Virus record (IMG/VR): IMGVR_UViG_3300027747_002221
Coordinates: 1-64,000 of that record
Direction: 5' to 3' (one strand)
Length of the DNA stretch: 64,000 nucleotides
The notes beneath the pieces were generated by a model. It made no database searches. It saw only the letters and a list, made by a program, of their open reading frames with translations, and was not told where the DNA came from. The translations under genes were made by a program, and so were the position numbers. Positions 1 through 63,734 of this stretch are shown here, piece by piece (position 1 is the first letter of the stretch; each line of letters begins with the position of its first letter).

Positions 1-579
1 TATGATTAGAATTTCAAACCATTTTATTATAAAATTTTCATAATCTTTAAAAGAAACATTTTTTTGATTTGCCTGGTTTGAACTATAAGGTTTTATTTCA
101 ACAGATTCTAATCTAGATAATAGATTAAAATTTAATATCATTTCATCTACGTCTTTTTTTATTAACTTATCCCCGGCCAACATTAGAACACAAAAAGGTT
201 TTTTAAGTAAAGCCATATTTTTCCATACTAATTCTGAATCTTGTCTACAATCAAAATCATAACTAACAGATGTATAGCATTCTTCATCCGTTGTTATATC
301 ATTTATCATTGATAAATTTGTAATAATATTAAATTTTACATTGGGGTTATATAATTTACATACTTGTTTTAAATCATAAAAGTATTTTTTAGGTAGTAAG
401 CCAACCTCACCCCCGTATAAATCTATTTGATCTATGGTTTCATATGTAGATATTTCTGATAATTTTTCATTCAATTTATCTAAATTTAATAATTTTTTAT
501 CTGATAATTGTTGATTATCTAAATAACAAAAATCACATCTAAAATTGCAATAGTACCACGGATTAATAGAAATATTCAT
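1..579 (-). CDS. Radical SAM protein (N-terminal part; runs off window edge)
   Basis: Not in ORF track. My translation from ATG at 579 (TAATG overlap with upstream stop): MNISINPWYYCNFRCDFCYL...IDLYGGEVGLLP, with CxxxCxxC and GGE motifs. Confidence 0.85.
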   Translation of the reverse strand, partial: MNISINPWYYCNFRCDFCYLDNQQLSDKKLLNLDKLNEKLSEISTYETIDQIDLYGGEVGLLPKKYFYDLKQVCKLYNPNVKFNIITNLSMINDITTDEECYTSVSYDFDCRQDSELVWKNMALLKKPFCVLMLAGDKLIKKDVDEMILNFNLLSRLESVEIKPYSSNQANQKNVSFKDYENFIIKWFEILII

Positions 580-1175
580 TAAATATCTAAATTTATAACT
601 ATTGCAAGTCGATCTTCATTACCAGTATAAGTATTAACTTCGTGCCAAATATAAGCAGGTGCTACAACCAATCTATTTTTTTTAGTTTCCACAGAAAATG
701 TTTCTGGGGGGTGAAAATGTAGATTAGAATGAAAAGCCGGATCTCTTAATATTAATTCCCCGCCGTATTGACTATTATCTATATCATTAAGATAAAAAAT
801 TCCAAATGCGGACGCACCAATATGATTATGTAAAGATTTATTTTCTCCAGTTTTCATGAAAGGTAACTTTCCTGAATTTTTAGATACCATAACTTTTAAC
901 ATATCTTTTGTCAAAATGTTTTCATCGTAAGATGATGCTAATTCATAAAAACCATCAAGAAATAAATTTTGCAACTCTCGCAAAATTGGAAACTTATTTA
1001 AATTATTTTCTGTAAATAGAGGTATCTCATCATCTATTAAAGATTTATTCGCATTATTTTGTGCCATATAATCTTTAAAAACAGTTAATGTTATTGTTTT
1101 TATTTTCTCATTCCAACTATCATCTAAAATATGATCCTTAATTACCACATTAACAGGGAATATCGTTTTTATCAC
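579..1175 (-). CDS. 2OG-Fe(II) oxygenase-like protein (TIGR02466-like)
   Basis: LHNH...GIFYL...GGELILRDP...PAYIWHEV...DRLAIVINL jelly-roll pattern; paralog of 1896..2534. Confidence 0.7.
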   Translation of the reverse strand: MIKTIFPVNVVIKDHILDDSWNEKIKTITLTVFKDYMAQNNANKSLIDDEIPLFTENNLNKFPILRELQNLFLDGFYELASSYDENILTKDMLKVMVSKNSGKLPFMKTGENKSLHNHIGASAFGIFYLNDIDNSQYGGELILRDPAFHSNLHFHPPETFSVETKKNRLVVAPAYIWHEVNTYTGNEDRLAIVINLDI

Positions 1176-1899
1176 AGGGTTCTCCTTTATAAACTTTTAT
1201 ATATTTATTATAGATTTCTTCAGCAATAAATTGTTGTCCAATCCCATTAGGATGATTATCTTTTTCTGATAATACAAATTTAGAATATTTGGATGAAAAA
1301 GTATATCCTCCAAGTTTTTTATCGGATGGCCAACCAATAATATTATTCATATTATCTATTTTATTGAAATATTTTGAGTTTAATAGTTGAGCAAAAAACT
1401 TAGTTTGATCTATATCTGTTCTAAAAATATTAACTAATGGAAAATGTATTATTGGAATTTGTTTCATCTGACAGAAATCATCAAGATAACAAATTAATCT
1501 AAGTGTTTGTTCTATACACTCCATATGCAATTCTTTTTTATCTATATGTTCCTTTAATTTTTTGGAAAAAGAATTCAATTCCTCTAAAAAATTCGGATCA
1601 TGATCTTCACAGTAAATGTTATTAATGTCATACTGGTCATACAATGATGTTTTTAATCCGTACGTCCATCCAACAACCACTAAATCTATTTTTTCAGGAT
1701 TTTCCAATATATTGGACATTAATTTGTCATACAAATAGATATTAGATGCACCTGTCTTTGAAATATTTTTAACAGGTAAATTTAATTTTTCGGATATTAA
1801 ATCTGGCCATTTTTTAAAATTAAAATCCACATCTAAATCATCATGGGGTTGCCATTTACCATCTGAATAACTAGTACCAGCAGTTAGAATATATTTCAT
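1150..1899 (-). CDS. SGNH/GDSL-like hydrolase or acyltransferase
   Basis: N-terminal AGTSYS, GASN block, C-terminal DNHPN (DxH) motif. Confidence 0.55.
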   Translation of the reverse strand: MKYILTAGTSYSDGKWQPHDDLDVDFNFKKWPDLISEKLNLPVKNISKTGASNIYLYDKLMSNILENPEKIDLVVVGWTYGLKTSLYDQYDINNIYCEDHDPNFLEELNSFSKKLKEHIDKKELHMECIEQTLRLICYLDDFCQMKQIPIIHFPLVNIFRTDIDQTKFFAQLLNSKYFNKIDNMNNIIGWPSDKKLGGYTFSSKYSKFVLSEKDNHPNGIGQQFIAEEIYNKYIKVYKGEPCDKNDIPC

Positions 1900-2534
1900 T
1901 TTCTATCTAAATCCACAACAGCACAAAATCGATCTTTTCCATAAAATTTACTAACTTCATGCCAAATATATGATGGCCCTATAATCATTCTATTTTTTTT
2001 AGTTTTAATTTTAATTTTTTGCTTAGGATGAAATCCTTTATTCGCATGAAATGCAGGATCATGTAAAATTAATTCACCGCCATATTGACTATTATCTACA
2101 TCTGACAAGTAAAATATAGCAAATGCTCTGGATGGGTGATTATGTAATCCCACTACCATATTCTTTTTTAATTCCGTAAAATTGCCGGAATCACTAAAAA
2201 ATATTTTTTTTATTTCATCTTTTGTTAGAATATTATTTTTAAAACTTGAAGCTAATTCATAAAAACAATCAATATACATATCTCGCAATTCTTTTATTAT
2301 AGGAAACATAGATGAGGTTTCCTCAGTAATAACATATGGTTTGGAAAGTTTGTGATAATCGTATGTCAATAAAAAAGTATTTTTATTATTTTTTAAATCT
2401 TTTCTCAAATCGCAATATTCACCATTTAACGATAGGGCCTTTAAAGTATTAATTAATTCGCAATTCCATTGTTCAGATTTTTCATAATCTTTTATTAGAA
2501 TATTAGTAAAAAATGGAGTTATTATATTATTCAT
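1896..2534 (-). CDS. 2OG-Fe(II) oxygenase-like protein (TIGR02466-like)
   Basis: LHNHP...FYL..DNSQYGGELILHDP...PSYIWHEV...DRF; near-identical C-terminal half to 579..1175. Confidence 0.7.
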   Translation of the reverse strand: MNNIITPFFTNILIKDYEKSEQWNCELINTLKALSLNGEYCDLRKDLKNNKNTFLLTYDYHKLSKPYVITEETSSMFPIIKELRDMYIDCFYELASSFKNNILTKDEIKKIFFSDSGNFTELKKNMVVGLHNHPSRAFAIFYLSDVDNSQYGGELILHDPAFHANKGFHPKQKIKIKTKKNRMIIGPSYIWHEVSKFYGKDRFCAVVDLDRK

Positions 2535-3627
2535 TTAATGTATAACATTTAAGATATTCTTTATTATGTCTATTTTCTAAAATAGATTGTATCAAATAGT
2601 GATTGACTGTACCCAAATCTATAGAGAAAAATGATCCTGCAGAATGCTCGAATGTGGCTTCTGTTTCAATTATTTTTTCTAAAAAATCATCCGTAAAATT
2701 TACAAAACAAGGCAAAAAATCTAGTTTATTAATATCAGATTTTACGTATGTATAAACGCTTTCCTCATTCCAACTGTTACCCGCAATATTGTTAAATTTT
2801 TTAAATAATTCTATATCATCTTTAGTTATATTACTAAAAGTAATCTCATTATTAAATGACGTATACATGAAAGGTTCCTGCCAAATTCTTTCACACGTAA
2901 AAAGTTTTGCATATTCCGAGTTATCTGTTATTATATCGTAAAAATTTTCAAAAGTATATTTCTTTGTTAAATTTAGTTTTTTAGTAAATCTTTCTGTAAG
3001 AATATGAACAAAAAATATTTCTTTTATTTCATACAAATATTTGATAAGATCTTTTTTAATTAGCGGCACTAAAGAATTTTTTAATTCTTTTTTATAACTG
3101 CCATCGTATAAATATGACGCAAGTAAATATTCCACACTAGCAAAAGAAAGAAATTCGTGAGTATTGAATTTATATTGTACAAGATTATTATATTTCTCAG
3201 AAAACTCGTTAAAACTAATATTATAGATATGATGACTTTTAGTAAAAACAGTTAGACGAAATAATAATGATTTATATATGTAATATATTTTATCTAAACT
3301 AGTTTTTTTTAAAATATTAACTAACCAAATAATTAATAGATCTAAAAATATATTTTCTTTGGCATATATAATAACTTTTGTATCCAAAGATTTTAAATAC
3401 AAAAACATTTTTTCAATAGTATCAAATGTTTTTTCTTTACCTATTATATCCTCTAAATCCATGCCCGCGGCAATTATTTTTCCATGATGATTTCCTGCAG
3501 CGGAAACTAACATATGTTCGGAAATTTTTTCAGAAATAACAATTCTATCTAAATTAACATCAATATGTGTATCATTAGAAATATATACATTATTAAATAA
3601 ATGAATTTTTTCTATCAAATGTAACAT
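2527..3627 (-). CDS. Hypothetical protein, paralog of 9113..10312
   Basis: 366-aa ORF; shares HLFxxVxxxxDxHID, RxVIS and SxExxLAxxxYD blocks with 9113..10312. Confidence 0.6.
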   Translation of the reverse strand: MLHLIEKIHLFNNVYISNDTHIDVNLDRIVISEKISEHMLVSAAGNHHGKIIAAGMDLEDIIGKEKTFDTIEKMFLYLKSLDTKVIIYAKENIFLDLLIIWLVNILKKTSLDKIYYIYKSLLFRLTVFTKSHHIYNISFNEFSEKYNNLVQYKFNTHEFLSFASVEYLLASYLYDGSYKKELKNSLVPLIKKDLIKYLYEIKEIFFVHILTERFTKKLNLTKKYTFENFYDIITDNSEYAKLFTCERIWQEPFMYTSFNNEITFSNITKDDIELFKKFNNIAGNSWNEESVYTYVKSDINKLDFLPCFVNFTDDFLEKIIETEATFEHSAGSFFSIDLGTVNHYLIQSILENRHNKEYLKCYTLNE

Positions 3628-4684
3628 CTTGTATTTTTATAACCTTTCTTATAAAATTTCCCTCATCTTCGTAAGGAGTAACCTCAATATCTAGTCCATT
3701 TGCTTCTATGATAGTTGCAGCAATTTGTTTCATAGATTTACAATGTTCCTCTACCAAACCAAACTTTTTCTGATCCTTCACAGTTTTTCGGCATCCATTA
3801 CATATTAAAAACATTGGGCAGGTATAACAGGCATTTTTCATAGTATTTAAATCGTAATCATTTGTCAAAGGAGTAAAAAAATCTCCAGACATTTCCGATT
3901 CAAAGTCTATTGGTTTTTCCTTGTCGTCTCCAAAGGATCCGCAAGAGTAATAATCTCCTTCAGGTTGCAATGCTCGTATGCTGGAATCGCAATTTCTAGA
4001 TTGAGGGCATGTAGTACCTTTGCCAGTCAATCTGCCCAACATTTGCGAAGTATTATGTTCCCAAGGATGCAGACCTGCTTTCCAAATATTTATATACTGT
4101 TTGTATATTTTAGAAAGTAGATACGGTTTTTCCTGATCTCCTGATGCCATTGCATAATTTATTTTACAAACCACATTCATTTTTTTCGCAAGTTCCACAG
4201 TCTTTAAAACAGTATCTTCATTTTCTTCCGTGATAACTGAAATAAATTGTGGTCTATACCCAATCTTATCCAACATCATATTAGAAACATCCCAAAAATC
4301 TTTTTCGGTAAATGGGGTATAGTCACCTTTTAATCGCCCATTACCATATTGAAAACTTGTAGAAACACCAACTCTAGGATTTAAAAATAAATCTGTCCAT
4401 TTTTTAGGTTGTTTATAAAATGGCCAAAGATTAGTAGTTAAAGATAGTGTGGTTGATAAATTATTTTTATCCAAATAATCTATTATATCCCAATAATATT
4501 TTGGTTTCATCATCAAAGGATCGCCACCATTAACAATAATAGTATTGGTATTCGGAAATCGTTTTAAAAATTTAAAAACATAGTCTAAATTTAAAACTGA
4601 AGTATGTTTTTCACTAATTTTAGTTGAAGAGCAGAAAGTACATTTGAAATTACATACCTCAGTTGGTTTTATAATTAAGTCCAT
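3593..4684 (-). CDS. Radical SAM/SPASM domain protein
   Basis: CNFKCTFC, NGGDP; C-terminal CPQSRNC...YYSCG...CYTCPMFLICNGC...HC auxiliary cluster motif. Confidence 0.88.
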   Translation of the reverse strand: MDLIIKPTEVCNFKCTFCSSTKISEKHTSVLNLDYVFKFLKRFPNTNTIIVNGGDPLMMKPKYYWDIIDYLDKNNLSTTLSLTTNLWPFYKQPKKWTDLFLNPRVGVSTSFQYGNGRLKGDYTPFTEKDFWDVSNMMLDKIGYRPQFISVITEENEDTVLKTVELAKKMNVVCKINYAMASGDQEKPYLLSKIYKQYINIWKAGLHPWEHNTSQMLGRLTGKGTTCPQSRNCDSSIRALQPEGDYYSCGSFGDDKEKPIDFESEMSGDFFTPLTNDYDLNTMKNACYTCPMFLICNGCRKTVKDQKKFGLVEEHCKSMKQIAATIIEANGLDIEVTPYEDEGNFIRKVIKIQDVTFDRKNSFI

Positions 4685-5187
4685 TACATTAATCCCGGAA
4701 TATACATTTCATAGCTTATTAGTCTTCTTGGGCCTGTAATATGTTTTGCTCTATGCTGAAAAATTTTATTTTGATTTAGCCACATAAAGTCTCCTCGTTT
4801 TGGATATATAACAAATTCTTCAGTTTGATTTTTAACTTGTATATTATTTCCATAGTTATCATCTAAATATAACAACAGATTAGAATTAAAATTTTTCTTT
4901 ACCATATAATCGGTGTGCCATTCTTTGGATTTAGTATCAACTCCCTGCCACATAGATTTTTCTAATAATTCTATGTTTGGAAATAATTTAGATAAGTGTC
5001 TATCAAATATTATATCATAAATTTCACTCAAATATTTTTGTGCTTTTTTATCTATGATAGGATTGTTATCTATAATGTCTTCATTCTCAGAACAATCTAA
5101 AAATACAAACTCAGAAAAATCATAATTATCTATTTCGGCAAAATGCCCTTGTATATACCCGTTAACAAAAAAATCATACGTATTCAT
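4684..5187 (-). CDS. 2OG-Fe(II) oxygenase
   Basis: WHTD (HxD)...FQHRA (H)...RRLISY (2OG-binding R). Confidence 0.72.
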   Translation of the reverse strand: MNTYDFFVNGYIQGHFAEIDNYDFSEFVFLDCSENEDIIDNNPIIDKKAQKYLSEIYDIIFDRHLSKLFPNIELLEKSMWQGVDTKSKEWHTDYMVKKNFNSNLLLYLDDNYGNNIQVKNQTEEFVIYPKRGDFMWLNQNKIFQHRAKHITGPRRLISYEMYIPGLM

Positions 5188-5726
5188 ATATTAAAATAGT
5201 AAGATGATACTATTCTTTTATTTTTAGACTTTTCTGCCCTATGTAAAAAATTATTTTTGCAATTTACCCCAATGAGCATTCCTTCTGTTGGATATATTTT
5301 AACTTCAGAATTTTTAGTTTTAAAATAAATTGCACCATCATCTTTCATATTGGAATGATATAATAAAAAGAAACAATTAGGTCCTTCGCGTAAATCATTA
5401 TGCCATACCGTTGCATCGGTGTTTACCCCTTCCCAAATGCGTCTTTTTTCTATAGTATAATCTTTAAAATATGGTTCCACAATATCTTTTGCAATCTGTA
5501 AATGTATTTGATGTAATATTATGTTATAAATTTTTATATCTTTTGGATGATAATCATTATTTTTACCTCCCTCATGTATCCAAATAATATCACTTAATAA
5601 AGGAGATATAATATCATGGTATTTTTTTCCGGTTGCTATAAAAAACCCATCGTGTGTAAATTTTTTAATTAGGTTTTTCGAATCCATATTTGTTATTACA
5701 TTCTCTGGTATATTCTGTTTCGCCAA
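5184..5726 (-). CDS. 2OG-Fe(II) oxygenase
   Basis: WEGVN...WHND...FLHRA...KRIVSSY; start may be Met at 5687. Confidence 0.72.
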   Translation of the reverse strand: MAKQNIPENVITNMDSKNLIKKFTHDGFFIATGKKYHDIISPLLSDIIWIHEGGKNNDYHPKDIKIYNIILHQIHLQIAKDIVEPYFKDYTIEKRRIWEGVNTDATVWHNDLREGPNCFFLLYHSNMKDDGAIYFKTKNSEVKIYPTEGMLIGVNCKNNFLHRAEKSKNKRIVSSYYFNI

Positions 5727-5958
5727 TAGATTCTACACCTTCAATCTCGCAAATTTTTCTATTAACTTCTCGTATTTCTTCTTTTAGTAAATTTGTATAT
5801 GGTTCCAAATTGAATATTAAATTTATATACATTTCATATTTTTCTTTATTATCTTGGCAATCGTATAAGCGAGTTATCCAAAGGTTATATAACTCTGCAC
5901 ATAAATCTCGTTCGTCACCTATTGTATTTTTTATTTTGAATAATTCTTCTGCTGTCAT
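5665..5958 (-). CDS. Hypothetical helical protein
   Basis: 97-aa ORF overlapping both neighbours in the operon. Confidence 0.5.
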   Translation of the reverse strand: MTAEELFKIKNTIGDERDLCAELYNLWITRLYDCQDNKEKYEMYINLIFNLEPYTNLLKEEIREVNRKICEIEGVESIGETEYTRECNNKYGFEKPN

Positions 5959-6458
5959 AATATATTAAAATCAAAAGATGCCACTCGGCGTTGTATACTA
6001 GATGGTGTTGCTTTATGCCAGAACTTTTTACCGTTATTTACTAGGAATAAATCTCCAGCAATTGGCTGAAAAGATTCTTCGCAATCCCCATATTTAAATT
6101 GGACTGCTCCGCCAGTTTCTAAATAAGTATTATCAAAATAATATAGAAAAAATAAATCGTACCCCTCAAACATATCAGTATGCCAACCTTGATTATCCTT
6201 ATCTACACCGTCCCACACGATAAATTTATTATATCTCGAATTATGCCAATTAGCATCTATATATTTTTCTTTTAAGTAATATGCAAATGTGTTTAATCTA
6301 TTAGTTAATTCCAAAGGAATATCTTTGATACCATTATCTCTAGATCTTTCTTCCACATTCAATAATTTAAAATCATTAATTTTTATTAATGATAGCGCAT
6401 CGGGTTCCAAAAATTTAAAAAATCCCTTTTCTTCTATATCTTTTACTATACTAGACAT
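5955..6458 (-). CDS. 2OG-Fe(II) oxygenase
   Basis: WDGVD...WHTD...GGAVQF...FWHKA...RRVASFDF. Confidence 0.72.
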   Translation of the reverse strand: MSSIVKDIEEKGFFKFLEPDALSLIKINDFKLLNVEERSRDNGIKDIPLELTNRLNTFAYYLKEKYIDANWHNSRYNKFIVWDGVDKDNQGWHTDMFEGYDLFFLYYFDNTYLETGGAVQFKYGDCEESFQPIAGDLFLVNNGKKFWHKATPSSIQRRVASFDFNIL

Positions 6459-8125
6459 GATGCCATTACCTCACTTTTAATAATCTCCAAATTATTTATT
6501 AATAATTCTTCAATAGTTTGTATTCTAAATTTGCCTAGTAACATTCTTATTGATCTAGGTTTAGAATTTTGGTCAAAAATATCATCAATTTCTTCTTGTA
6601 TAGGAATAAAATCATCTAGTTGCTTTATTATATTAAAACTAAGTTTGGCAAAATCTCCGGGTGTTATATATGTTTCAAATAAATGATAGCAATTTTTTAT
6701 TAAAAAATTACCTGCATTATTCATAAACCACATCTCTTTTATATCATCTTCAGTAAAAGAATAACAAGATTTTATCGTTTCAAAATAATTTACTTTATTT
6801 TTATACAATGTATTCCAACTATCAGACCCAGCTTCGTCTACTATATCGGAATAAACTTTTACAGTTTTAATGTTATACTTTTCTTTATAAACTTTATCGT
6901 TTAATCTAGAATCCGGAAGAAACATATAGTCATGTCTATAACTTCCCCATGCCTTAAAATTCCATATTATTTCCATTTCGTCGTAAAAATCTTGTATTGT
7001 TGAGCCTGGCATGCCCAATATTAATTCTAATGCAGGAACAGGAAAATTAAATTCTTCGCATCTATTTTTAATATGTTCACTTAATTTAATTTTATCTTTA
7101 AAAGAAAGATCAATCCTTTCTGCAACTTTCATTGCCTCATCTGATATACTTTGTATTGAAACTGTAGGCACTATAGAATTTCTAATTAGATCATTCCATT
7201 TATCATCTTTTTGGTTTTTTATTCTAATATCCGATCCAACTATATTAAACCAAGAATCAATTAATTTTTTTCTTCTATTTAAATCTTTGGATTTAACAGT
7301 CGAAATATCAGTCAGACTAAATTTATTATTCCATGCAAATTCAAATATTTCTAAATCTCTTTCTTCAAAAGCACCAAAATTTGCATCAGTTAAATATGCT
7401 CCAGTATACCCACATTTGATCATAGCTAAAATATCTCGTTTAACTATATCCAATGGCTTTTTGTAAATTTTTGTTCCTATTCCTCCACCCCATTCGCAGA
7501 ATACACATTTATAGGGACACCCCCGTGTTGTTTCCAAAACAATAAAAGGTTCCATTTGTTTTGTATAAGCATAATTTAAAATTTCAGTTAAATACTTTTC
7601 ATGTTCTTCATATACTGAATAGTTAATATCGAGTAAATATGTTTTATTTTTTTCAGATTGCAATTCCCACGATACATCTTTTTTATTAGGTTTGCCATTT
7701 GAGGTAAACCAGGAATCAATTAAATCTTCTACGAATACTTCTCCAGGTTTAGTGGGTTGGCATATAAAATCATAATCAATCCTTGATTCTAAAAATTTAT
7801 TGTCATTGGTACCAATATGCGGGCCACCTAATACTGTAATTTTATTTGAATTTTTATTTTTAATTGTTTTTGCTATATTATCTAATATATCGTAATTCCA
7901 GACATATGAAGAAAATAAAATTATATCTGCTGTTTGTATTTCTTCAATTACCTCATCTATAGTCTGATACATATCCCATTTATAAGGAGCTGGCAACCAT
8001 TCTACATTTTTAGAATATTTACCGTAACGTGTATAGTGACTTTGACATAGTAAATATGTCAAATTATTTACTAAAGACCAGTCAGCGTGAGGGGGATTAA
8101 TGAATGCTATTTTTAATTTCAACAT
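6446..8125 (-). CDS. Cobalamin-binding (B12-dependent) radical SAM protein
   Basis: N-terminal Rossmann-like FSSYVWN...VLGGPHI; ETTRGCPYKCVFC; LTDANFG. Likely start MLKLKIAFINPP at 8125 (ORF track extends to 8161). Confidence 0.82.
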   Translation of the reverse strand: MLKLKIAFINPPHADWSLVNNLTYLLCQSHYTRYGKYSKNVEWLPAPYKWDMYQTIDEVIEEIQTADIILFSSYVWNYDILDNIAKTIKNKNSNKITVLGGPHIGTNDNKFLESRIDYDFICQPTKPGEVFVEDLIDSWFTSNGKPNKKDVSWELQSEKNKTYLLDINYSVYEEHEKYLTEILNYAYTKQMEPFIVLETTRGCPYKCVFCEWGGGIGTKIYKKPLDIVKRDILAMIKCGYTGAYLTDANFGAFEERDLEIFEFAWNNKFSLTDISTVKSKDLNRRKKLIDSWFNIVGSDIRIKNQKDDKWNDLIRNSIVPTVSIQSISDEAMKVAERIDLSFKDKIKLSEHIKNRCEEFNFPVPALELILGMPGSTIQDFYDEMEIIWNFKAWGSYRHDYMFLPDSRLNDKVYKEKYNIKTVKVYSDIVDEAGSDSWNTLYKNKVNYFETIKSCYSFTEDDIKEMWFMNNAGNFLIKNCYHLFETYITPGDFAKLSFNIIKQLDDFIPIQEEIDDIFDQNSKPRSIRMLLGKFRIQTIEELLINNLEIIKSEVMASCLV

Positions 8126-9116
8126 ACTTAAAAGTCTCTTTAAAGACGCACTCACCCACATCTCTTACAATTTTTTTATAGTCATTTTTTATAAAACAAG
8201 TAAAAGGGCATTTTTTAAAATATTCACATTCGAAACAATTGTATTGATCAAAGAATTTTTGTATTATGATGGTAGAACCTAAATTTTTAGTGCTACTATC
8301 TCTTAATAAAACAGATCCTGAGCATCCGGCAGGATTAGTACCATCATACATAACTGTATAACTATTGCCTCTTGTACAGGACATTCTATTTTCTCTAGAA
8401 TTTTCTGTAAAATATGATATATTCAAACATAAAGGGTAATTATCAACCAAGTGTTTATAAAATTTTAATAGGTCTGATTCTTTTGGCATTAAGGTTTCAG
8501 AAATACTTATTGATGGTAGAAAAGAATCCCAATCGCATCTGAAATTATTATACAAATAATCAAAATATGAATCGCCCTTTATAACAGCTTCAATATTTTG
8601 TTTTGTCATTACCAAGGATATCATTTCAATTTTATCTTTAAAAATTTCTATATTATTTTTAAAGATATCAAACTGAGTATTAGTAAATCTACCATGGGGA
8701 TCGTATGATACTGATATTTTTAAATTATTTTTTTCAAGGAAATCTGAAACTTTTTTAGTTTCAAAAAAAACTAAATTTGTAACAAAATTAAAAACTAGTG
8801 TTTTTTCGGTATCCACCTTACTTTTTATTTTATCTATGAATCTTTGATATATACTTAAAAATTCTTCTTGAATCCAAATATCTTGAAATATTTCTCCACC
8901 CATTATATGTAATTTAAAATATGTAGATCTTTTATTATTATTGATCCATTCTACGATTCCTGGGACTTTGGAAAGTATTTCTTTTTCAGATGCACCTTGT
9001 GTATTGGTATGATCTTGAGGACAAAATACACACTTAAGATTGCAATGATCAAAAAGACAAATAACTAATTCTGCATAATCTATAATTTTTTTATCAATTA
9101 ATTCATAGGGTATCAT
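8097..9116 (-). CDS. Radical SAM protein with Cys-rich (SPASM-like) C-terminus
   Basis: CNLKCVFC, MGGE; C-terminal CTRG...GCSG...CFECEYFKKCPFTC...C. Confidence 0.82.
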   Translation of the reverse strand: MIPYELIDKKIIDYAELVICLFDHCNLKCVFCPQDHTNTQGASEKEILSKVPGIVEWINNNKRSTYFKLHIMGGEIFQDIWIQEEFLSIYQRFIDKIKSKVDTEKTLVFNFVTNLVFFETKKVSDFLEKNNLKISVSYDPHGRFTNTQFDIFKNNIEIFKDKIEMISLVMTKQNIEAVIKGDSYFDYLYNNFRCDWDSFLPSISISETLMPKESDLLKFYKHLVDNYPLCLNISYFTENSRENRMSCTRGNSYTVMYDGTNPAGCSGSVLLRDSSTKNLGSTIIIQKFFDQYNCFECEYFKKCPFTCFIKNDYKKIVRDVGECVFKETFKYVEIKNSIH

Positions 9117-10312
9117 TTTAGTGTAAATTTAAATAATTTTTCTCTCATTTTTTGCTGAGCTAAAGATTTAATATATGGTAAAAGTACAAAAAGTATTTGT
9201 TCTCTTAAATCAAGCGGAATATGAATCATTGCAATTTTTTCTTTAAGATTATCGTCTAAAACGTTATTATAATCTTCTTCCGACAAAATTTCTTTTCTTG
9301 CAGAATCCATATATTTAAAATTATAACTTGGATCACCATCATGGCCCGCATTTGTCAAATCTTTTATTATTAATGCTTTAGTGTCCTCAGACATCCACAC
9401 CGGCCAATTTCTAGAATCAGTCATCATTTTTGCAAAAGGAACGTTTGAAAAATCCACATCAGATGTCCCAGATGATCCTCCGGGATTACTATAACCCATA
9501 ATAGAAATAGCAAATTCATCGGTAACATTACATAAATCTTTTACATCTTTATCACTTATCAAAGATAAATCAAGCTTTGAATTCTTTCCAGGTTGATAAC
9601 TTTTAAAGTATGGCGCGCCGTCAAGATTTTTAAAATATGGGGCTTTATAAACTGACATTTTATCTAATTCTAAATAATTTTTAATTGTTTTAGAATGACC
9701 TCCCAATATTTTTTGTGCATCGTCATCCAATATATAGGTATCTATATGTTTTCTTACCTCTAAGATGTATAGTTCATATGTTCGTTTAATAAACCGTGCA
9801 AATAATTTTTTTAATTTTTCTTTTTTACTAAAGTTTCTATCATAGAATGCTGTTGCCAACATAAATTCTATAGAAGGCGAAAAATCTAAATCAGAAAAAT
9901 CAGACACCTCTGCAGTATCCCATAAGGATTTTATACGAGAAATTAAAGAATCGCACGGATTGCTATATACCTGCATTTTATGCCCATAGCAATCCGCAAA
10001 AGTTTCAAAAGAATCTTTATCCATATTCGTAGTGGATTTTAACCAAGATACTATTATCTTAGAAAAATTTTCTTCATCTGCAAATATAACAATTTTTTCT
10101 CCCTTTATAGCATAAAGGTTGCGTATAAAATCTGAAAAAGAAATGTCGCCCAACGCCTCATTCCAAGTTTTACCCGTGTTTAATGTTTTTGGATACACTG
10201 AAGCATCTTTAAGATCGTCCGTAGCATATTCTTTCGATATAACTACGCGATAATTAAAAGTGTCGATATGCTTATCTTGTTGTAAGAATACATCGTCAAA
10301 TAGGTGCAACAT
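9113..10312 (-). CDS. Hypothetical protein, paralog of 2527..3627
   Basis: 399-aa ORF; shared motifs as noted for 2527..3627. Confidence 0.6.
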   Translation of the reverse strand: MLHLFDDVFLQQDKHIDTFNYRVVISKEYATDDLKDASVYPKTLNTGKTWNEALGDISFSDFIRNLYAIKGEKIVIFADEENFSKIIVSWLKSTTNMDKDSFETFADCYGHKMQVYSNPCDSLISRIKSLWDTAEVSDFSDLDFSPSIEFMLATAFYDRNFSKKEKLKKLFARFIKRTYELYILEVRKHIDTYILDDDAQKILGGHSKTIKNYLELDKMSVYKAPYFKNLDGAPYFKSYQPGKNSKLDLSLISDKDVKDLCNVTDEFAISIMGYSNPGGSSGTSDVDFSNVPFAKMMTDSRNWPVWMSEDTKALIIKDLTNAGHDGDPSYNFKYMDSARKEILSEEDYNNVLDDNLKEKIAMIHIPLDLREQILFVLLPYIKSLAQQKMREKLFKFTLK

Positions 10313-11003
10313 TGGATTCCTCTTCTTTATTTTCTATTAATTGTAATCCTTCAGATATTCCAAAAGTTAACAAAAATAATGGGTTATTTTCGGTTGCCCA
10401 GTATGAGTATAAATTTTTTCCTCTAAACATATATTCACTGAAATATTTGGTATAAAACTTCAAATTTGATTCTTTAATCTTGCCATAGTAAATATAAAAA
10501 AGCTCATGCTTTAATAGAGATAAAAAATTTATGCCTGTTAGTTCTTCAGTTTCATCTACAGGAAATCCTTTTGCAAATTCTTGCATTTCCGGGGAATTCA
10601 CAATATACATATTAAATAGTGTTAAACTGTCTAGTTTACTTTCCCATTGTTTTATGATTTCCAAATTATCTTGTATAAAATTTTTATGGGGTATCAAATT
10701 TTCTATATCTATTTCTTTATATTCTAACAATAAATTTATTGTTAAAATTTCTAAACTTGGAATAGAACAAAGAACTGTAGAATTTAAATATTCCTTTAAA
10801 AGTTCTTCCTGTTCATTTTTATCATTAAAGCTAATATCGCATGGTATATCCAAATTAGAAATATACGTTAACAGTTTTGTGCCTTTAATTTTACTATTAG
10901 TATAATCTATTATAAATTCAACAGATTTATTTTCAAAATATTTTTTTAAATCTTCAATTGAAATAGGTGCAATAGTGTTAATTATAGTATTTGGTAAATT
11001 CAT
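10296..11003 (-). CDS. Hypothetical protein
   Basis: Likely start MNLPNTII at 11003 (TAATG coupling to stop of 11003..11638). Confidence 0.6.
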   Translation of the reverse strand: MNLPNTIINTIAPISIEDLKKYFENKSVEFIIDYTNSKIKGTKLLTYISNLDIPCDISFNDKNEQEELLKEYLNSTVLCSIPSLEILTINLLLEYKEIDIENLIPHKNFIQDNLEIIKQWESKLDSLTLFNMYIVNSPEMQEFAKGFPVDETEELTGINFLSLLKHELFYIYYGKIKESNLKFYTKYFSEYMFRGKNLYSYWATENNPLFLLTFGISEGLQLIENKEEESNVAPI

Positions 11004-11638
11004 TATCTTCTTCCTCTGGCAAAGTGGCATGCTGAATGGCATGATGCATGACAAACTGTGGCATCGTACACATAACTCTGATTTCTCGCATAATTTTGAT
11101 ACGCTGTTCTACATCTTTCCATAAAATTTTCCATTGAGTATGTAGATATTTGTAAATTTGTGTCTACTGCCCCGCGTGCAGGCGTTACATAATCACTCAA
11201 CCCCGTCTGCCCGGTAGAAAAGTTTAAATATGCTACAGCAATTACATCGTATACGAAACCCGCAGTAGGCTTAGTTCCGTTATTGCCACCAGTCCCATTA
11301 ACAAATAAACGAGCCTGGACACTTCTTATTTTGAGATACCGAGATGTAAAATAACTAAGATAAGTATGGATCCTCTCTGCAATAATTTGGTCACCGACAC
11401 CGGCAGGGTTGCCATCCATTTTCCCAATAAATGGGTCATTGGGTGGATAGTTAGGATTGTCATAATTATTGCCGCCCATATCACTAGTGGGTATAACTGC
11501 AGTCGCATATGCTGTTCCTGGGGCATATGTGGGCAAATTATTCGTACCCCAAGTCACACCCTGCCAATTGGTATACATATAGTCTTGGAATCTGCTTATT
11601 ATATTACGTTCGTTAACGGGATTGGTTAGTACCGCCAT
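11003..11638 (-). CDS. Gly/Asn/Thr-rich protein with C-terminal (CHxx)3 tail; candidate modification substrate
   Basis: Ends ...DATVCHASCHSACHFARGRR; lies immediately downstream of a rSAM/SPASM gene. Confidence 0.65.
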   Translation of the reverse strand: MAVLTNPVNERNIISRFQDYMYTNWQGVTWGTNNLPTYAPGTAYATAVIPTSDMGGNNYDNPNYPPNDPFIGKMDGNPAGVGDQIIAERIHTYLSYFTSRYLKIRSVQARLFVNGTGGNNGTKPTAGFVYDVIAVAYLNFSTGQTGLSDYVTPARGAVDTNLQISTYSMENFMERCRTAYQNYARNQSYVYDATVCHASCHSACHFARGRR

Positions 11639-12693
11639 GTTTCTTTCCTTATATTAATAATCTTATTTGATATAATATTTATACCTGCCAGAGATTTCAT
11701 TAAACTTTTTGGTGCACCACATACGTCATCTTGCCATGATAATTGGTGACAATCTCCACCACAATACTCAAAAACTTCGCAGGAATAACACCGGGTGTCC
11801 CCGCTTCTTTCACAGGCAATATTTTCTATGCGAGCAGGATTTGTTAAAAGCTGTTCTATACTATCAGTTATTTTTCCAAAATAGTTTTCTGGGGCGCTAT
11901 TTGGGCAACCTGCGATTGTCCCATCTGCATTAATTGTAAATAATTTTTCCTCACAATTTCTACAAAAAGTGCCAGATTTATTAAATCCGCTCTCAAACTT
12001 AATATATACATCTTCTAAAAAATCATTAGAAAACCATTTTCTTGCATCATACTGAACAGTTTGTTCATGCATTTTTAAAAACCATGCATCCTGTTCCAAA
12101 TTAGAAGGAAATATTTCCGGATGCAAATTTGCATTACCATTACCCGTCAATCTTTCAAATGATACTTCTTGTACTCCGAGTATTTTTATCCAGCTAAGTA
12201 AATGAATTGGGTCTATATTAATAGTATCTTTAGTTACACTAATAAAAAGCTTTACAGTTACGCTTTCATTGAGTAAAGTTTTTACATTTTTTAACCAAAG
12301 ATCAGATTGTTTAGTATTTGCAAATCTTATTTTTGGATCCCAACTTGTACCTACTCTATTTCCGAGTTGATTTTTTACAAAATTTATAATTTCAGAATCA
12401 AGTTTGTACGTCAAGTTTGTTGTTGCACACCAGGACATATTATTCCAAAGACCATTACAAGAATTATAAACCTTTTTCATTTCAGAAACAGGGACAAGAA
12501 AAGGTTCTCCGCCATGAAATTCAAAGTGTACGTTATCTAAATTTGGGGCGTAGGATTTTAGTCTGGTTATCCAATCTATAACTAAATCAGTATTCCAATA
12601 AACTTTGGCACCGTTAATACCATTAGTAAAACAATGTTTACAATTTAGGTTACAGGTTTCTGTTGTTTTTAAATAAACTAAAGCATTTTTCAT
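11626..12693 (-). CDS. Radical SAM/SPASM domain protein
   Basis: CNLNCKHC, FHGGEP; CRNC...IAGCP...CYSCEVFEYCGGDC...C SPASM pattern. Confidence 0.9.
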   Translation of the reverse strand: MKNALVYLKTTETCNLNCKHCFTNGINGAKVYWNTDLVIDWITRLKSYAPNLDNVHFEFHGGEPFLVPVSEMKKVYNSCNGLWNNMSWCATTNLTYKLDSEIINFVKNQLGNRVGTSWDPKIRFANTKQSDLWLKNVKTLLNESVTVKLFISVTKDTINIDPIHLLSWIKILGVQEVSFERLTGNGNANLHPEIFPSNLEQDAWFLKMHEQTVQYDARKWFSNDFLEDVYIKFESGFNKSGTFCRNCEEKLFTINADGTIAGCPNSAPENYFGKITDSIEQLLTNPARIENIACERSGDTRCYSCEVFEYCGGDCHQLSWQDDVCGAPKSLMKSLAGINIISNKIINIRKETWRY

Positions 12694-12705
12694 TAAACAA
12701 TTATA

Positions 12706-13176
12706 TTATATTTTAGGTAATTTGTCTATTAAAAATTTTTCCAAACCAAAACTTAGAATTAAAGATTCCTCATCATTAATTGCCTGATGTTTTGTATTTG
12801 CGGGTATGAATATTGTTTTGCCCTTATTAAGTATAATACTTTTACCACCAAGTATTAAATTTAGAGAACCATGTATGACCTCAACAAATACATCGTCGGG
12901 GTCGGTATGCTCTGGGAAACTTTTTGAATTTTTGAATGACCGAAAGGCATGGCAGGTCACTGGCCCATTGTGAGAAAATGATTTACAGTAATTAAAAATG
13001 TTTTCATTATATTTTTCCAAACCTTCAAGTTTTATACAATGATTATATACAGAATGTAAATGTCCTATATCATTAATAGTATTTTCTCTGCCTTCTGTAT
13101 CTATATAATACAATAAATGCTGTTGGTATATTAAATTATTTTCTATTATTTTTTCAAATTCTTGCAATGTTATCAT
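12706..13176 (-). CDS. JmjC/cupin-type 2OG oxygenase (YcfD/RoxA-like)
   Basis: FPEHTDPDDVF (HxD)...IFIPANTKHQA...LILSFG. Confidence 0.65.
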   Translation of the reverse strand: MITLQEFEKIIENNLIYQQHLLYYIDTEGRENTINDIGHLHSVYNHCIKLEGLEKYNENIFNYCKSFSHNGPVTCHAFRSFKNSKSFPEHTDPDDVFVEVIHGSLNLILGGKSIILNKGKTIFIPANTKHQAINDEESLILSFGLEKFLIDKLPKI

Positions 13177-13177
13177 A

Positions 13178-14848
13178 TTACATTAAGGCAATTTCAATTA
13201 TGCCTTCCTCATGTGTAGTTTTATCTTCCAATGCAATAAACCTAATCGGCAAATTATTAATATCTGTTCTTACCGCAATGCCGGGATTTGTAGATACGGT
13301 TAATAAATCGCCCTTACTACAAGTTCCGATTATTCTAATTGGAACGCGTCCTTTAAGTGCAACTGCTTGAGAATTTTCTAATTCCGAATTCATTAAGTAT
13401 GCAGGTTTATCAGAAATAACACCTATTATTCTATTGGGATAATGCATAGTTGCAATAGTTACTTCTTTTTCTCCACCTATCATAACTATGGTACCAACCG
13501 GATATTCTATATCGGTTAAATATTTTTCTGCCAAGTCAGCATAGTTTGCAGAAGTTGCTGTTCCTGAGAAGGTTGTGGCATATAAAGTATTAATTGCAGG
13601 ATTAAAGTAAAAATTTCCAAATCCGCTCACGCATGGAGTTTGTACACCAAATCCAGAAACAAAAACGGGATAGAAGTTTTGGTTGGCGCCAAGGCCAGTT
13701 ACAGAAATTGTGGTGCTAGATATCGATAATCCTGTTGCGCCAATCGGACCTGTTGCGCCAGTTAATCCCGTTGCGCCAGGTAGGCCCGGTGAACCAATTG
13801 ATCCTGTTGCGCCTGTTGAGCCTTTAGGACCCGTCGCTCCTGGGATAATGCTGGTTGCGCCAGTTGCGCCAATTCCTGTAGCACCTGTTGCGCCAATCGG
13901 ACCTGTTGCGCCAGTTAATCCCGTTGCGCCAGGTAGGCCAGTTGCACCCGTTGCACCCAATCCTGTTGCGCCCGTTGCACCCAATCCTGTTGCGCCTGTT
14001 GAGCCGTTCGCGCCGGTTGCACCGGTTGAACCTGTTGAGCCTTTCGCGCCGGTTGCCCCGGTGAATCCTGTAGCGCCAATCGGACCTGTTGCTCCTGTTC
14101 CGGTTGCGCCCGATGCACCCACTCCTGTTGCGCCAGTTAGACCCGTTGCGCCGGTTAAACCCGTTGCACCAGTTGGTCCTGTGCTCCCTGTTGAGCCAGT
14201 TGATCCCGTTGGTCCGGTTGTGCCGGTCGCACCCACAATGGCATTTCCCTGAGCACCAGTTGCACCCACGGGCCCTGTTGCGCCGGTTGGTCCTATAGAT
14301 CCTGTAGCACCGCGAAGACCTGTTGCGCCAGTGGGGCCTGTAACAATTACATTAGAACCCATAGGCCCAACTGGCCCAGTAGCACCAATAGGACCAGCTG
14401 GACCTTGCCCACCACCTAAAACGGGTAATATTGAAACAATATCGCCGGCTACTGTTGCAGTTGAAAGTATAACAGAATTAGATGTTACCGTATAGTCCGC
14501 TGCTTCTAAAGGACCACCTGGCGAAATTAAAACACCATTGACCCAGACTAAAACAGGATCAGTATTTGAATTAAATGTTAAATAAGTGCCCGCTAAACTA
14601 TTTGTTGTGTTATCAAATGTTGTTGTTGCATTTGCTGTTACATAATCATATCTAACTAAGGTTGAAGTATTTGCATCCAGCGGTGACCAATATCTTGTAC
14701 CATTTGGATCGCCCCGTAAATAATATCCAAGCGCACCCGGTAAACCTAAATTTGGTTCTGCCTGAGATAGCTGTAAGAAATTATATCTATCTAAAGATAT
14801 ATTGCCAGTTGCTGTGCGTACTTTGCCGCTTAAATTTTGTAGTGCCAT
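13178..14848 (-). CDS. Collagen-like tail fibre protein with C-terminal chaperone-like domain
   Basis: Long G-X-Y run ([10 protein letters not shown]); C-terminal [10 protein letters not shown]...GVIS..PAYLMN...ALKGRVP domain typical of large-phage fibres. Confidence 0.75.
13725..14410 (-). repeat. Collagen-like Gly-X-Y coding repeat (GATG[P/L/A/S]T)
   Basis: Degenerate 9/18-nt repeats (cctgttgcgcc, ccagttgcacc); locally GC-rich. Confidence 0.9.
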
Positions 14849-23598: not shown

Positions 23599-23624
23599 TT
23601 GAATATAATGTTGATGCAACCTAT

Positions 23625-39586: not shown

Positions 39587-39637
39587 AATAACTCCTTAAG
39601 TATGTTTTAATATTATATAGCATAATGTATTTTTTGT

Positions 39638-63733: not shown

Positions 63734-63734
63734 A

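What the first reader, a model, noticed from the sequence alone, without database searches (positions are those of the whole stretch)
11003..11638. Candidate precursor: 211-aa protein ending in VCHASCHSACHFARGRR
Seen: a Gly/Asn/Thr/Pro-rich body, compositionally like a structural protein, carrying only one other Cys. It ends abruptly in three CHxx units (CxxxCxxxC, with His-X-Ser/Ala triplets) and a basic RGRR terminus. It overlaps the rSAM/SPASM gene upstream and is TAATG-coupled to the next gene. Established: Cys at i/i+4 spacing is a ranthipeptide/sactipeptide substrate pattern, aromatic-X-X triplets including His are triceptide cyclophane substrates, and the His-Xaa-Ser (HxsA/B/C/D) system pairs HxS repeats with two rSAMs. 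Inference: this is a protein-sized RiPP-like substrate whose C-terminal core is cross-linked or hydroxylated. An alternative is a metal-binding Cys/His tail.
Basis: partly seen in the sequence, partly recalled or inferred. Interest (0 to 1): 0.88.

Follow-up and report, generated by a model that had tools for sequence, protein, structure and literature searches.

The report
Phage fibre-linked protein with radical-SAM-targeted tail
The 211-aa protein belongs to a large, unnamed family of phage particle proteins whose invariant Cys-His-x-Ser x3 + RGRR tail is always encoded beside radical-SAM enzymes and a tail-fibre gene, pointing to an undescribed enzymatic modification of a virus particle protein.

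Summary
The ORF 11003..11638 (-) has 211 aa and ends in VCHASCHSACHFARGRR. It overlaps the upstream rSAM/SPASM gene by 13 nt and is TAATG-coupled to the next gene.

The tail is not a chance feature. It defines a family of at least 875 clusters at 50% identity. In 253 regular tails from a profile search, all three Cys, all three His and the three Arg are invariant. 258 of 263 members have exactly three CHxx units. Synonymous codons vary freely, so selection acts on the protein.

All 34 loci with at least 3 kb on both sides carry a radical SAM gene and a homolog of the next gene (phrog_20767). The usual order is tail fibre with a self-cleaving chaperone end, cupin, rSAM, this protein, phrog_20767 protein, an unknown ~370-400 aa protein in many loci, then rSAM.

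The body is a folded domain (pTM 0.76) with no PDB fold match. The Agrobacterium phage Atu_ph07 homolog gp170 was found in purified virions, peaking in the top gel band. The enzymes were not found there.

Best reading: a fibre-associated virion protein whose tail the SPASM enzymes modify, rather than a released RiPP. The chemistry is unknown, and every curated family cut-off is missed. No paper describing the family was found. Copies also occur in Bdellovibrionota chromosomes.

The parts
11003..11638 (-). T* protein, 211 aa: a folded alpha/beta body plus a C-terminal (CHxx)3-RGRR tail. It belongs to an unnamed family; only PHROG 35144 (function unknown) matches it.
11006..11053 (-). The 16 codons of the invariant tail, C196-R211 (CHAS CHSA CHFA RGRR). 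The window copy carries rare variants: Ala at the fourth position of units 2 and 3, and Phe at the third position of unit 3.
11626..12693 (-). rSAM1: a radical SAM/SPASM enzyme with CX3CX2C at residue 14, no N-terminal RRE domain, and a C-terminal SPASM Cys motif. Its gene overlaps the T* start.
12706..13176 (-). Small cupin (Cupin_2, weak JmjC_2 match) with an HxD...H triad. It lies directly upstream of rSAM1 in class A loci.
13178..14848 (-). Collagen-repeat tail fibre with a C-terminal domain like an intramolecular chaperone with autoproteolytic cleavage (IMC). This is the conserved upstream neighbour of the cassette.
10296..11003 (-). phrog_20767 protein (235 aa from the ATG at 11003), the invariable partner of T*. 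Its model is confident (pLDDT 93) but has no PDB fold match.
9113..10312 (-). 'unk399': a conserved 399-aa partner of unknown family, unrelated to rSAM in profile comparison.
8097..9116 (-). rSAM2: a paralog of rSAM1 (hhalign E 1e-25) with a SPASM-type C-terminal Cys motif.
6446..8161 (-). B12-binding radical SAM enzyme (KedN5-like C-methyltransferase type), present in a subset of the cassettes.
579..6458 (-). Downstream extension of the cluster. It holds 2OG-Fe(II) oxygenases with Pfam matches (5955-6458, 4684-5187, 1896-2534, 579-1175) and a paralog of the first two without a Pfam match (5184-5726). It also holds a third rSAM (3593-4684), a paralog of unk399 (2527-3627) and an unknown ORF (1150-1899).

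Best explanation
The ORF encodes a structural protein of the phage particle, here called T*, not a small-peptide precursor. Its folded alpha/beta body carries a strictly C-terminal 16-residue tail, C-H-x-S three times followed by R-G-R-R.

The gene is translationally coupled within a conserved module: tail fibre with a self-cleaving chaperone end, cupin oxygenase, SPASM radical SAM enzyme, T*, phrog_20767 protein, an unknown ~370-400 aa protein in many loci, then a second SPASM radical SAM enzyme.

Proposed mechanism (inferred):
- In the infected cell, rSAM1 engages the exposed basic tail directly. rSAM1 has no RRE domain and resembles the anaerobic sulfatase-maturating enzyme (anSME) in architecture. 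Alternatively the tail is delivered by the phrog_20767 or unk399 partners.
- Together with its paralog rSAM2, rSAM1 installs one radical modification per CHxS unit. The most likely products are intramolecular cross-links: a Cys thioether and/or a His-to-Ser/Asn cyclophane.
- The cupin, and in some phages a B12-rSAM and 2OG oxygenases, add hydroxyl or methyl groups.
- The modified, rigid tail stays on the protein, which is built into the virion, probably at or near the neighbouring fibre. The enzymes stay behind.

Shown:
- Motif invariance under protein-level selection.
- Universal co-location with rSAM, phrog_20767 and fibre genes.
- A folded body.
- Virion presence of one homolog, with the enzymes absent.

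Inferred:
- That the tail is the rSAM substrate.
- The kind of chemistry.
- Attachment to the fibre.
For: Motif.
- In 253 regular tails from a profile search that did not use the motif pattern, C, H and R are invariant (253 of 253). Ser at the fourth position of the units is 97%, 86% and 91%.
- 258 of 263 members have exactly three units, and the body has no Cys in 164 of 245 members.
- In 149 distinct tail DNAs, TGT/TGC and CAT/CAC are used about equally. Ser uses both AGY and TCN codons, and Arg uses both AGR and CGN.

Context.
- The same gene order occurs in Pseudomonas, Ralstonia, Agrobacterium and Sinorhizobium jumbo phages.
- It also occurs in about 90 IMG/VR loci.
- The short tandem class B also sits next to 3-7 CX3CX2C proteins and a phrog_20767 homolog.
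- 34 of 34 loci with at least 3 kb on both sides have both an rSAM and a phrog_20767 homolog within 3 kb.
- In 49 of 72 loci a fibre ORF matching the C-terminal 140 aa of the window's fibre ends either 0-10 nt upstream of T* or about 1.5 kb upstream. The latter distance equals cupin plus rSAM1.

Gene coupling in the window: a 13-nt overlap upstream and TAATG downstream.

Enzyme.
- The SPASM domain is above its cut-off, at 32.7 against 27 bits.
- The closest solved relatives of the rSAM1 profile are anSME 4K37 (E 2e-8), 8VPO, and CteB 5WGG.
- The CX3CX2C motif sits at residue 14, so there is no RRE domain.

Protein.
- The AF2 model has pTM 0.76, with a low-confidence tail protruding after strand 188-196.
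- Fusions to the Gly_rich_2 domain exist.

Virion evidence, from PMC6102473 Suppl. Table S5.
- Atu_ph07 gp170 is listed at 31.89 kDa; the mass was recomputed as 31,894 Da.
- It gave 8 peptides and 35% coverage, in bands 1-9, and was most abundant in band 1. Normal 30-34 kDa proteins peak in bands 7-8.
- gp165, 168, 169, 171 and 172 (the rSAMs, phrog_20767 homolog and cupin) are absent from the list.
Against: - There are no biochemical data, so no modification has been observed.
- All rSAM scores are far below every curated functional family cut-off, so the reaction type cannot be assigned.
- Three Cys plus three His could simply bind metal, with the rSAMs acting on the fibre or on the partner proteins.
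- Class B loci mostly lack the cupin.
- The anomalous gel position of gp170 could reflect an SDS-resistant trimer rather than covalent links. Several other Atu_ph07 proteins also smear over many bands.
- Virion presence is shown for one homolog only. RSL2 ORF068 is annotated only as hypothetical.
- The fibre link is absent or undetected in 23 of 72 loci, and some of the fibre matches lie in the middle of the ORF rather than at its C-terminal end.
Confidence: 0.6

Rival explanations
1. The tail is an unmodified metal-binding motif. Three Cys-His dyads would bind Zn, Fe or Cu, perhaps along a trimer axis as His motifs do in T4 fibre tips. The neighbouring radical SAM enzymes would then act on another substrate: the fibre, phrog_20767, unk399 or a small molecule.
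For: Cys and His are the classic metal ligands, and all six are invariant. The body carries no other conserved ligand, since only P36 and R105 are nearly invariant. The number of units is fixed at three. T* is structural. Metal-binding fibre tips are established knowledge for T4 gp37 and gp12.
Against: This reading does not explain why a SPASM rSAM gene is translationally coupled to T* in essentially every locus. It does not explain the near-invariant Ser/Asn at the fourth position of each unit, or the invariant RGRR. Variants that lose the middle Cys keep three H-x-S/N units. Modification and metal binding could also coexist.
Confidence: 0.2
2. This is a classical RiPP. The ~195-aa body is a large leader, as in NHLP or Nif11-type precursors, and the 16-residue tail is cross-linked, cut off and released as a bioactive peptide.
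For: The core-like motif is C-terminal and lies next to SPASM maturases. Protein-sized leaders are known. The best NCBIfam matches are peptide maturases: PapB, DynA, DarW/DarE.
Against: No protease or transporter was seen in the cassette genes that were searched. There is no conserved GG-type cleavage site; positions -6 to -1 are hydrophobic or polar, ending in V or I. The body is a conserved folded domain that is sometimes fused to structural Gly-rich domains. The homolog gp170 is found in virions. The gene sits in the fibre module.
Confidence: 0.08
3. rSAM1 works like anSME and oxidises one or more tail Cys to C-alpha-formylglycine. The resulting aldehydes would covalently link T* to Lys residues of fibre or virion partners.
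For: anSME is the closest solved relative of the rSAM1 profile. It has the same RRE-less architecture and a similar size, and it is the second-best NCBIfam match. The third unit, C-H-x-S-R, shares Cys(0) and Arg(+4) with the sulfatase C-x-P/A-x-R motif; the sulfatase motif is established knowledge, and the tail consensus is. gp170 runs mostly at the top of the gel.
Against: The score is 46 bits against a cut-off of 349. Position +2 is mostly Gly or Ser, not Pro or Ala. This reading does not explain the invariant His or the need for three units. All SPASM enzymes cross-hit each other at this level.
Confidence: 0.1

Closest known systems
Anaerobic sulfatase-maturating enzyme (anSME, PDB 4K36-4K39) acting on sulfatase proteins
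   Same: It is a SPASM radical SAM enzyme of about 360 aa without an RRE domain, and it modifies a Cys in a short motif of a full-size protein. It is the best solved-structure match to the rSAM1 family profile. Both motifs have Cys and an Arg at +4.
   Different: The score is far below the family cut-off, 46 against 349 bits. The substrate here has three Cys-His units at the extreme C-terminus and is not a sulfatase. Position +2 is not Pro or Ala.
QhpD/QhpC (quinohemoprotein amine dehydrogenase gamma subunit maturation)
   Same: A SPASM rSAM installs exactly three Cys thioether cross-links in a protein that stays part of a larger assembly (established knowledge). QhpD is among the NCBIfam matches.
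   Different: The score is 35.5 against 453 bits. The acceptors in QhpC are Asp or Glu, which the tail lacks. There is no CTQ cofactor context, and the setting here is a phage virion.
Triceptides and the His-Xaa-Ser (HxsABCD) system
   Same: The tail holds three aromatic-x-Ser/Asn units (H-x-S), the motif type cross-linked by 3-residue cyclophane synthases. His-based cross-links are documented (PMC11499958). Two paired rSAMs are present, as in Hxs.
   Different: YhhB, FxsB, AmcB, HxsB and HxsC models score 20-28 bits against cut-offs of 268-445. No HxsA or HxsD match was found. An invariant Cys precedes every His. The substrate is a 130-300 aa virion protein.
Ranthipeptide and sactipeptide maturases (PapB, CteB) and the CXXX-repeat system (TIGR04115)
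   Same: PapB is the best NCBIfam match (E 6e-14), and CteB is among the solved relatives. Cys residues sit at i/i+4 spacing.
   Different: The scores are 52 against 340 bits for PapB and 27 against 350 for TIGR04115. The tail has no Asp or Glu acceptor. The enzyme has no RRE, and the substrate has no short leader peptide.
Phage fibre tip proteins and adhesins encoded next to fibres (T2-type gp38 class), and fibres with intramolecular chaperone domains (K1F endosialidase S74, Peptidase_G2)
   Same: The gene lies directly downstream of a fibre with an IMC-type C-terminus. Some members are fused to a glycine-rich domain. A homolog is present in virions.
   Different: No sequence or fold similarity to any known adhesin was found. 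Attachment to the fibre has not been shown.

Membership tests
Radical SAM / SPASM superfamily (for rSAM1, the neighbour that defines the system) | CX3CX2C cluster motif plus a C-terminal SPASM domain (TIGR04085 above cut-off) | tested here: met
   CNLNCKHC lies at residue 14. TIGR04085 scores 32.7 bits against a cut-off of 27. The conserved C-terminal Cys are C302, C305, C311, C315 and C325.
Ranthipeptide (PapB family) | Enzyme reaches the NF047865 cut-off; substrate has Cys-X3-Asp/Glu units | tested here: not met
   The score is 52.1 bits against 340. The tail consensus has no Asp or Glu.
Triceptide (3-residue cyclophane) systems | Aromatic-X-X motifs in the substrate | tested here: met
   Three H-x-S/N units are present. 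One variant has F-T-S in unit 2, and variants without the middle Cys keep three H-x-S/N units.
Triceptide (3-residue cyclophane) systems | Maturase belongs to the YhhB/XyeB, FxsB or AmcB families | tested here: not met
   NF041707 scores 26.4 against 445, TIGR04269 27.6 against 370, and NF041718 26.9 against 425.
His-Xaa-Ser system (HxsABCD) | HxsA repeat protein, HxsD, and the HxsB and HxsC maturases above cut-off | tested here: not met
   T* and the phrog_20767 protein match no NCBIfam family. HxsB scores 26.1 against 370, and HxsC 19.8 against 267.9.
anSME / formylglycine system | Enzyme reaches TIGR03942; substrate motif is C/S-x-P/A-x-R | tested here: not met
   The score is 46.3 against 349.45. 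The third unit is C-H-[G/S/N]-[S/A/N]-R, so Cys and Arg(+4) are present but P/A at +2 is mostly absent.
RiPP precursor in the strict sense | Leader plus core with proteolytic release; a protease and/or exporter in the cluster; RRE-mediated recognition | tested here: not met
   No protease, exporter or RRE was detected in the cassette genes searched. The body is folded. The homolog is retained in virions. Actual cleavage cannot be tested with these tools.
Virion structural protein | Physically detected in purified particles | tested here: inconclusive
   This is met for the homolog Atu_ph07 gp170 through published proteomics. It was not tested for the window's own protein or for other members.
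Post-translationally cross-linked protein | Observed mass shift or loss of free thiols on the tail | not testable with these tools
   This requires mass spectrometry of the C-terminal peptide.

The most novel reading that the evidence does not exclude
T* is the distal cap or adhesin of a self-cleaving (IMC-type) fibre. Its (CHxS)3-RGRR tail is converted by two SPASM radical SAM enzymes and a cupin into a polycyclic, possibly metal-binding or covalently stapling knob. That would be the first enzyme-installed radical cross-link in a virus particle, made by a module of proteins with no known fold or named family (T*, phrog_20767, unk399). The module is shared by T4-like and jumbo phages and by the fibre-bearing predatory Bdellovibrionota.
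Probability: 0.3. Interest if true: 0.92.

Novelty: new variant of a known kind. Interest (0 to 1): 0.8.

Why it matters
- Radical SAM/SPASM maturases are known for small peptides (RiPPs), sulfatases and a few cofactor proteins. To my knowledge none has been tied to a structural protein of a virus particle; five of the nine literature searches run here were aimed at such a link and found no paper on it.
- The family is large: at least 875 clusters at 50% identity. It spans cultured jumbo phages of Pseudomonas, Ralstonia, Burkholderia, Agrobacterium and Sinorhizobium, so it can be tested directly.
- If the tail is modified, this gives enzymologists a new substrate motif and probably new chemistry.
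- It would give phage biologists a new principle of virion or fibre maturation, which may bear on particle stability or receptor binding.
- It would explain why many large phages carry clusters of radical SAM, cupin and 2OG-oxygenase genes. Genome papers so far list these only as accessory genes of unknown function (PMC11898562, PMC8066314).
- The chromosomal copies in Bdellovibrionota suggest the same module serves phage-like fibres in bacterial predators.

Tried and rejected
- Pfam and NCBIfam on T*: no family. PHROGs gave only phrog_35144, of unknown function.
- PDB sequence searches: the T* profile gave only noise (best E 0.01, a homeodomain), and the phrog_20767 profile gave nothing.
- Foldseek of both AF2 models against PDB: no match. 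The best E-values were 2.7 and 0.42. In BFVD, T* found only its own family.
- Megablast of 14 kb of the window against isolated phages: no match.
- tblastn of a class B protein against isolated phages: no match.
- phmmer of rSAM1 alone against PDB: no match. Only the family profile reached anSME.
- unk399 as a degenerate rSAM, suggested by a weak YhhB hit: rejected by hhalign.
- The motif as a DNA- or RNA-level repeat: rejected, because synonymous codons vary freely.
- A heme-c-like CX3CH reading: considered, because the tail contains two overlapping CX3CH strings. I judge it unlikely: nothing resembling a heme-attachment gene was seen in the cassettes, assembly is cytoplasmic, and the third unit would be left over. 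It is not formally excluded.
- Thiazole/oxazole formation: no YcaO-like match among the window's cassette genes.
- Literature: nine searches were run. Five were aimed at phages and radical SAM enzymes. None of the nine, nor the genome papers I read, describes this family.
- One look-up of encoding contigs failed because of the start-codon choice, and succeeded with a shorter start.
Full report
**1. Observation**

The ORF at 11003..11638 (- strand) is real. It has 211 aa and ends ...DATVCHASCHSACHFARGRR. It contains four Cys, three of them in the tail.

The upstream rSAM gene (11626..12693) ends in GAA ACA TGG CGG TAC TAA. The ATG of the ORF lies inside that string, giving a 13-nt overlap, and an AAGGA Shine-Dalgarno sequence precedes it. 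The ORF's TAA shares its last A with an ATG (TAATG) at 11003. The next gene therefore most likely starts there and is 235 aa.

**2. The tail defines a large family**

tblastn found the same C-terminus in these jumbo phages:
- Pseudomonas pPa_SNUABM_DT01
- Ralstonia RSL2, RSF1, the FLC4 phages and RsoM3USA
- Burkholderia FLC6, FLC8 and SURPRISE13
- Agrobacterium Atu_ph07

The Sinorhizobium phage Phosso homolog came from its neighbour gene.

In a five-way alignment the bodies are only 18-28% identical. Even so, C196, H197, S199, C200, H201, C204, H205, R208, R210 and R211 are invariant.

A word-seeded profile search of 5.8 billion proteins gave 442 hits. None has a Pfam domain or a name other than 'hypothetical'. 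An exhaustive HMM search of 1.84 billion representatives gave 875 clusters at E<=1e-3 and 620 at E<=1e-10.

Among the 266 retrieved members:
- 245 end in the strict motif.
- 258 of 263 have exactly three CHxx units.
- The body has no Cys at all in 164 of 245.

In 253 regular tails from these searches, which did not use the motif pattern, the consensus is V-C-H-[ASt]-S-C-H-[Satn]-[Sn]-C-H-[Gsn]-[San]-R-[Gs]-R-R. Cys, His and the three Arg are present in 253 of 253.

L056 is the window's own 222,055-bp contig.

In 149 distinct tail DNAs, TGT/TGC and CAT/CAC are used about equally. Ser uses both AGY and TCN codons, and Arg uses both AGR and CGN. Conservation is therefore at the protein level.

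**3. Context**

Two architectures exist.

Class A is the window's type, with T* of about 170-310 aa. The order is cupin, rSAM1, T*, phrog_20767 protein, [unk399], rSAM2, [B12-rSAM].

Class B has two tandem T* genes of about 126-140 aa. They are followed by a ~400-aa CX3CX2C protein, a ~367-aa protein, a phrog_20767 homolog and 3-6 more CX3CX2C proteins. Class B bodies align with the C-terminal two thirds of class A bodies (hhalign probability 99.6%).

All 34 loci with at least 3 kb on both sides have an rSAM-like gene and a phrog_20767 homolog within 3 kb.

A further conserved neighbour is a tail fibre resembling the window's fibre. The C-terminal region of that fibre (13178..14848) matches:
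- Pfam Peptidase_G2, the intramolecular-chaperone (IMC) autoproteolytic cleavage domain: 24.3 bits, just below the cut-off of 25.
- phrog_19602, phrog_22593 and phrog_6427.

In 49 of 72 loci with at least 4 kb upstream, an ORF matching the last 140 aa of that fibre lies on the same strand. It ends 0-10 nt before T* in class B, or about 1.5 kb before T* in class A. The latter distance is exactly cupin plus rSAM1. Most matches sit at the extreme C-terminus of the ORF, though some lie mid-protein.

In the window the cluster continues downstream with:
- a B12-rSAM
- four 2OG-Fe(II) oxygenases and a paralog of two of them
- a third rSAM
- a paralog of unk399

**4. The proteins**

*T\**. The AF2 model has pLDDT 79 and pTM 0.76. 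It is an alpha/beta domain (H10-25, H87-101, E104-114, E127-138, H166-185, E188-196). The tail protrudes after the last strand at low confidence. There is no PDB fold match (best E 2.7), and BFVD returns only family members. Some members carry a Gly_rich_2 (PF21722) domain, either fused or inserted.

*rSAM1*. CX3CX2C lies at residue 14, so there is no N-terminal RRE domain. The SPASM domain is above its cut-off.

All functional NCBIfam models are hit weakly and far below their cut-offs:

| Model | Bits | Cut-off |
|---|---|---|
| PapB | 52 | 340 |
| anSME | 46 | 349 |
| DynA | 46 | 450 |
| QhpD | 35.5 | 453 |
| CXXX-repeat | 27 | 350 |
| HxsB | 26 | 370 |

The family profile's best solved relatives are anSME 4K37 (E 2e-8), 8VPO, and CteB 5WGG.

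*rSAM2* is a paralog of rSAM1 (hhalign E 1e-25).

*Cupin*. It has an HTD...H triad and a weak JmjC_2 match.

*phrog_20767 protein*. It models very confidently (pLDDT 93, pTM 0.87) but has no PDB fold or sequence relative.

*unk399* is unrelated to rSAMs in profile comparison.

**5. Experimental evidence from the literature**

The Atu_ph07 paper (PMC6102473, Suppl. Table S5) lists gp170 among the proteins of purified virions. Its listed mass is 31.89 kDa, and I recomputed 31,894 Da for L003 8161-9051.

- gp170 gave 8 unique peptides and 35% coverage.
- It was found in gel bands 1-9 and was most abundant in band 1. That is the top band, where 87-127 kDa proteins run; ordinary 30-34 kDa proteins peak in bands 7-8.
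- The neighbouring fibre gp176 is also virion-associated.
- gp165, 168, 169, 171 and 172 (the rSAMs, phrog_20767 homolog and cupin) are not listed.

The high-mass migration is consistent with covalent linkage or an SDS-resistant oligomer. It does not prove either.

Genome papers on the Burkholderia phages merely list the cupin, rSAM and 2OG genes as accessory genes of unknown function. Nine literature searches were run, five of them aimed at phages and radical SAM enzymes. None found a description of this family or of rSAM modification of virion proteins.

**6. Interpretation**

The most economical reading is that T* is a fibre-module virion protein. Its exposed, strictly C-terminal tail would be the substrate of the co-translated SPASM enzyme or enzymes, and the modified tail would stay on the protein.

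The classical RiPP reading, with a leader and a released core, is disfavoured for four reasons:
- The body is folded.
- No protease, exporter or RRE is present.
- The protein is found in virions.
- The gene sits in the fibre module.

A pure metal-binding tail remains the main rival. However, it does not explain the universal coupling to an rSAM, the conserved Ser/Asn, or the RGRR end.

The chemistry is open. Three observations bear on it:
- Rare variants that lose the middle Cys still keep three H-x-S/N units, and one variant has F-T-S in unit 2. This leans towards an aromatic-x-Ser/Asn (triceptide-like) unit.
- Against that, Cys is invariant in regular tails.
- The anSME-like enzyme architecture and the C-x-x-x-R of unit 3 keep formylglycine possible.

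**7. Beyond phages**

The same pattern occurs in 32 stretches of GTDB species genomes. About 20 are from Bdellovibrionota, with the same partner genes. Two copies on contigs of 1.3 and 2.4 Mb, for which wider flanks were fetched, lie among housekeeping genes. In one of them (L157) the cassette lies about 6 kb from a Peptidase_S74 fibre-type protein. Bdellovibrio is known to use phage-like S74 fibres for prey recognition (PMC10769870). That paper does not mention radical SAM enzymes.

**8. Verdict**

This is a new, widespread variant of the 'SPASM maturase plus Cys-rich C-terminal substrate' theme, in which the substrate is a phage particle protein linked to a tail fibre. Interest is high because the family is large and unnamed, and it can be tested in cultured phages.

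Noticed in passing
L125-L158 (genome contigs), e.g. L157 10001-10549 and L158 10001-10699: The CHxS-tail protein and its partners (phrog_20767-like protein, ~364-aa protein, rSAMs, 2OG oxygenases, JmjC-like cupin) also occur in cellular genomes. About 20 of 32 hits are Bdellovibrionota MAGs. Two copies on contigs of 1.3 and 2.4 Mb lie among housekeeping genes. L157 has a Peptidase_S74 fibre-type protein about 6 kb away.
   Followed up: partly
window 579-6458 (- strand): The cluster continues downstream. It holds four 2OG-Fe(II) oxygenases (5955-6458, 4684-5187, 1896-2534, 579-1175) and a paralog of the first two without a Pfam match (5184-5726). It also holds a third radical SAM enzyme (3593-4684) and a paralog of the unknown 399-aa protein (2527-3627). 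Altogether the block has four rSAMs, five oxygenase-like genes and a cupin.
   Followed up: partly
window 13178-14848 and 15222-18128 (- strand): A collagen-repeat tail fibre with an IMC-like self-cleaving C-terminal domain, and a 968-aa tail-fibre protein, lie directly upstream of the cassette. The IMC-type fibre is a conserved neighbour of the cassette in 49 of 72 loci.
   Followed up: yes
L005, L025, L033, L082, L120 and others (IMG/VR): A short 'class B' form occurs as two tandem 126-140 aa CHxS-tail genes directly after a giant (up to 2,800 aa) fibre ORF, followed by up to seven CX3CX2C proteins. It was found only in metagenomic contigs, with no match in 50,697 isolated phage records.
   Followed up: partly
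Atu_ph07 gp170 = L003 8161-9051 (PMC6102473 Suppl. Table S5): This 31.9-kDa homolog is most abundant in the top SDS-PAGE band of purified virions, far above its expected position. The cause (covalent adduct or SDS-resistant oligomer) is unexplained.
   Followed up: partly
P0179, P0225, P0239, P0248, P0257, P0206 (family members): Rare tail variants exist. In two, the middle Cys is lost but three H-x-S/N units are kept. One has Phe in place of the second His. Two have four CH units followed by a Gly/Pro-rich end instead of RGRR. One has two units followed by GGGG.
   Followed up: no
P0166, P0117: The T* body occurs fused to, or interrupted by, a Gly_rich_2 (PF21722) domain.
   Followed up: no
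window 22261-23619, 36867-42942, 50675-52048, 56555-57664, 62411-63748: The phage is T4-like, with a gp43-type DNA polymerase, UvsX recombinase and DnaB-like helicase. It also carries sugar-nucleotide-type genes: a cytidylyltransferase, an aminotransferase, and two phrog_3980 paralogs fused to HAD- or kinase-like domains.
   Followed up: no
L001 11266-16078 (Pseudomonas phage pPa_SNUABM_DT01): In this jumbo phage the cassette is followed by five more annotated radical SAM genes and a 2OG-Fe(II) oxygenase, an unusually dense run of radical enzymes.
   Followed up: no
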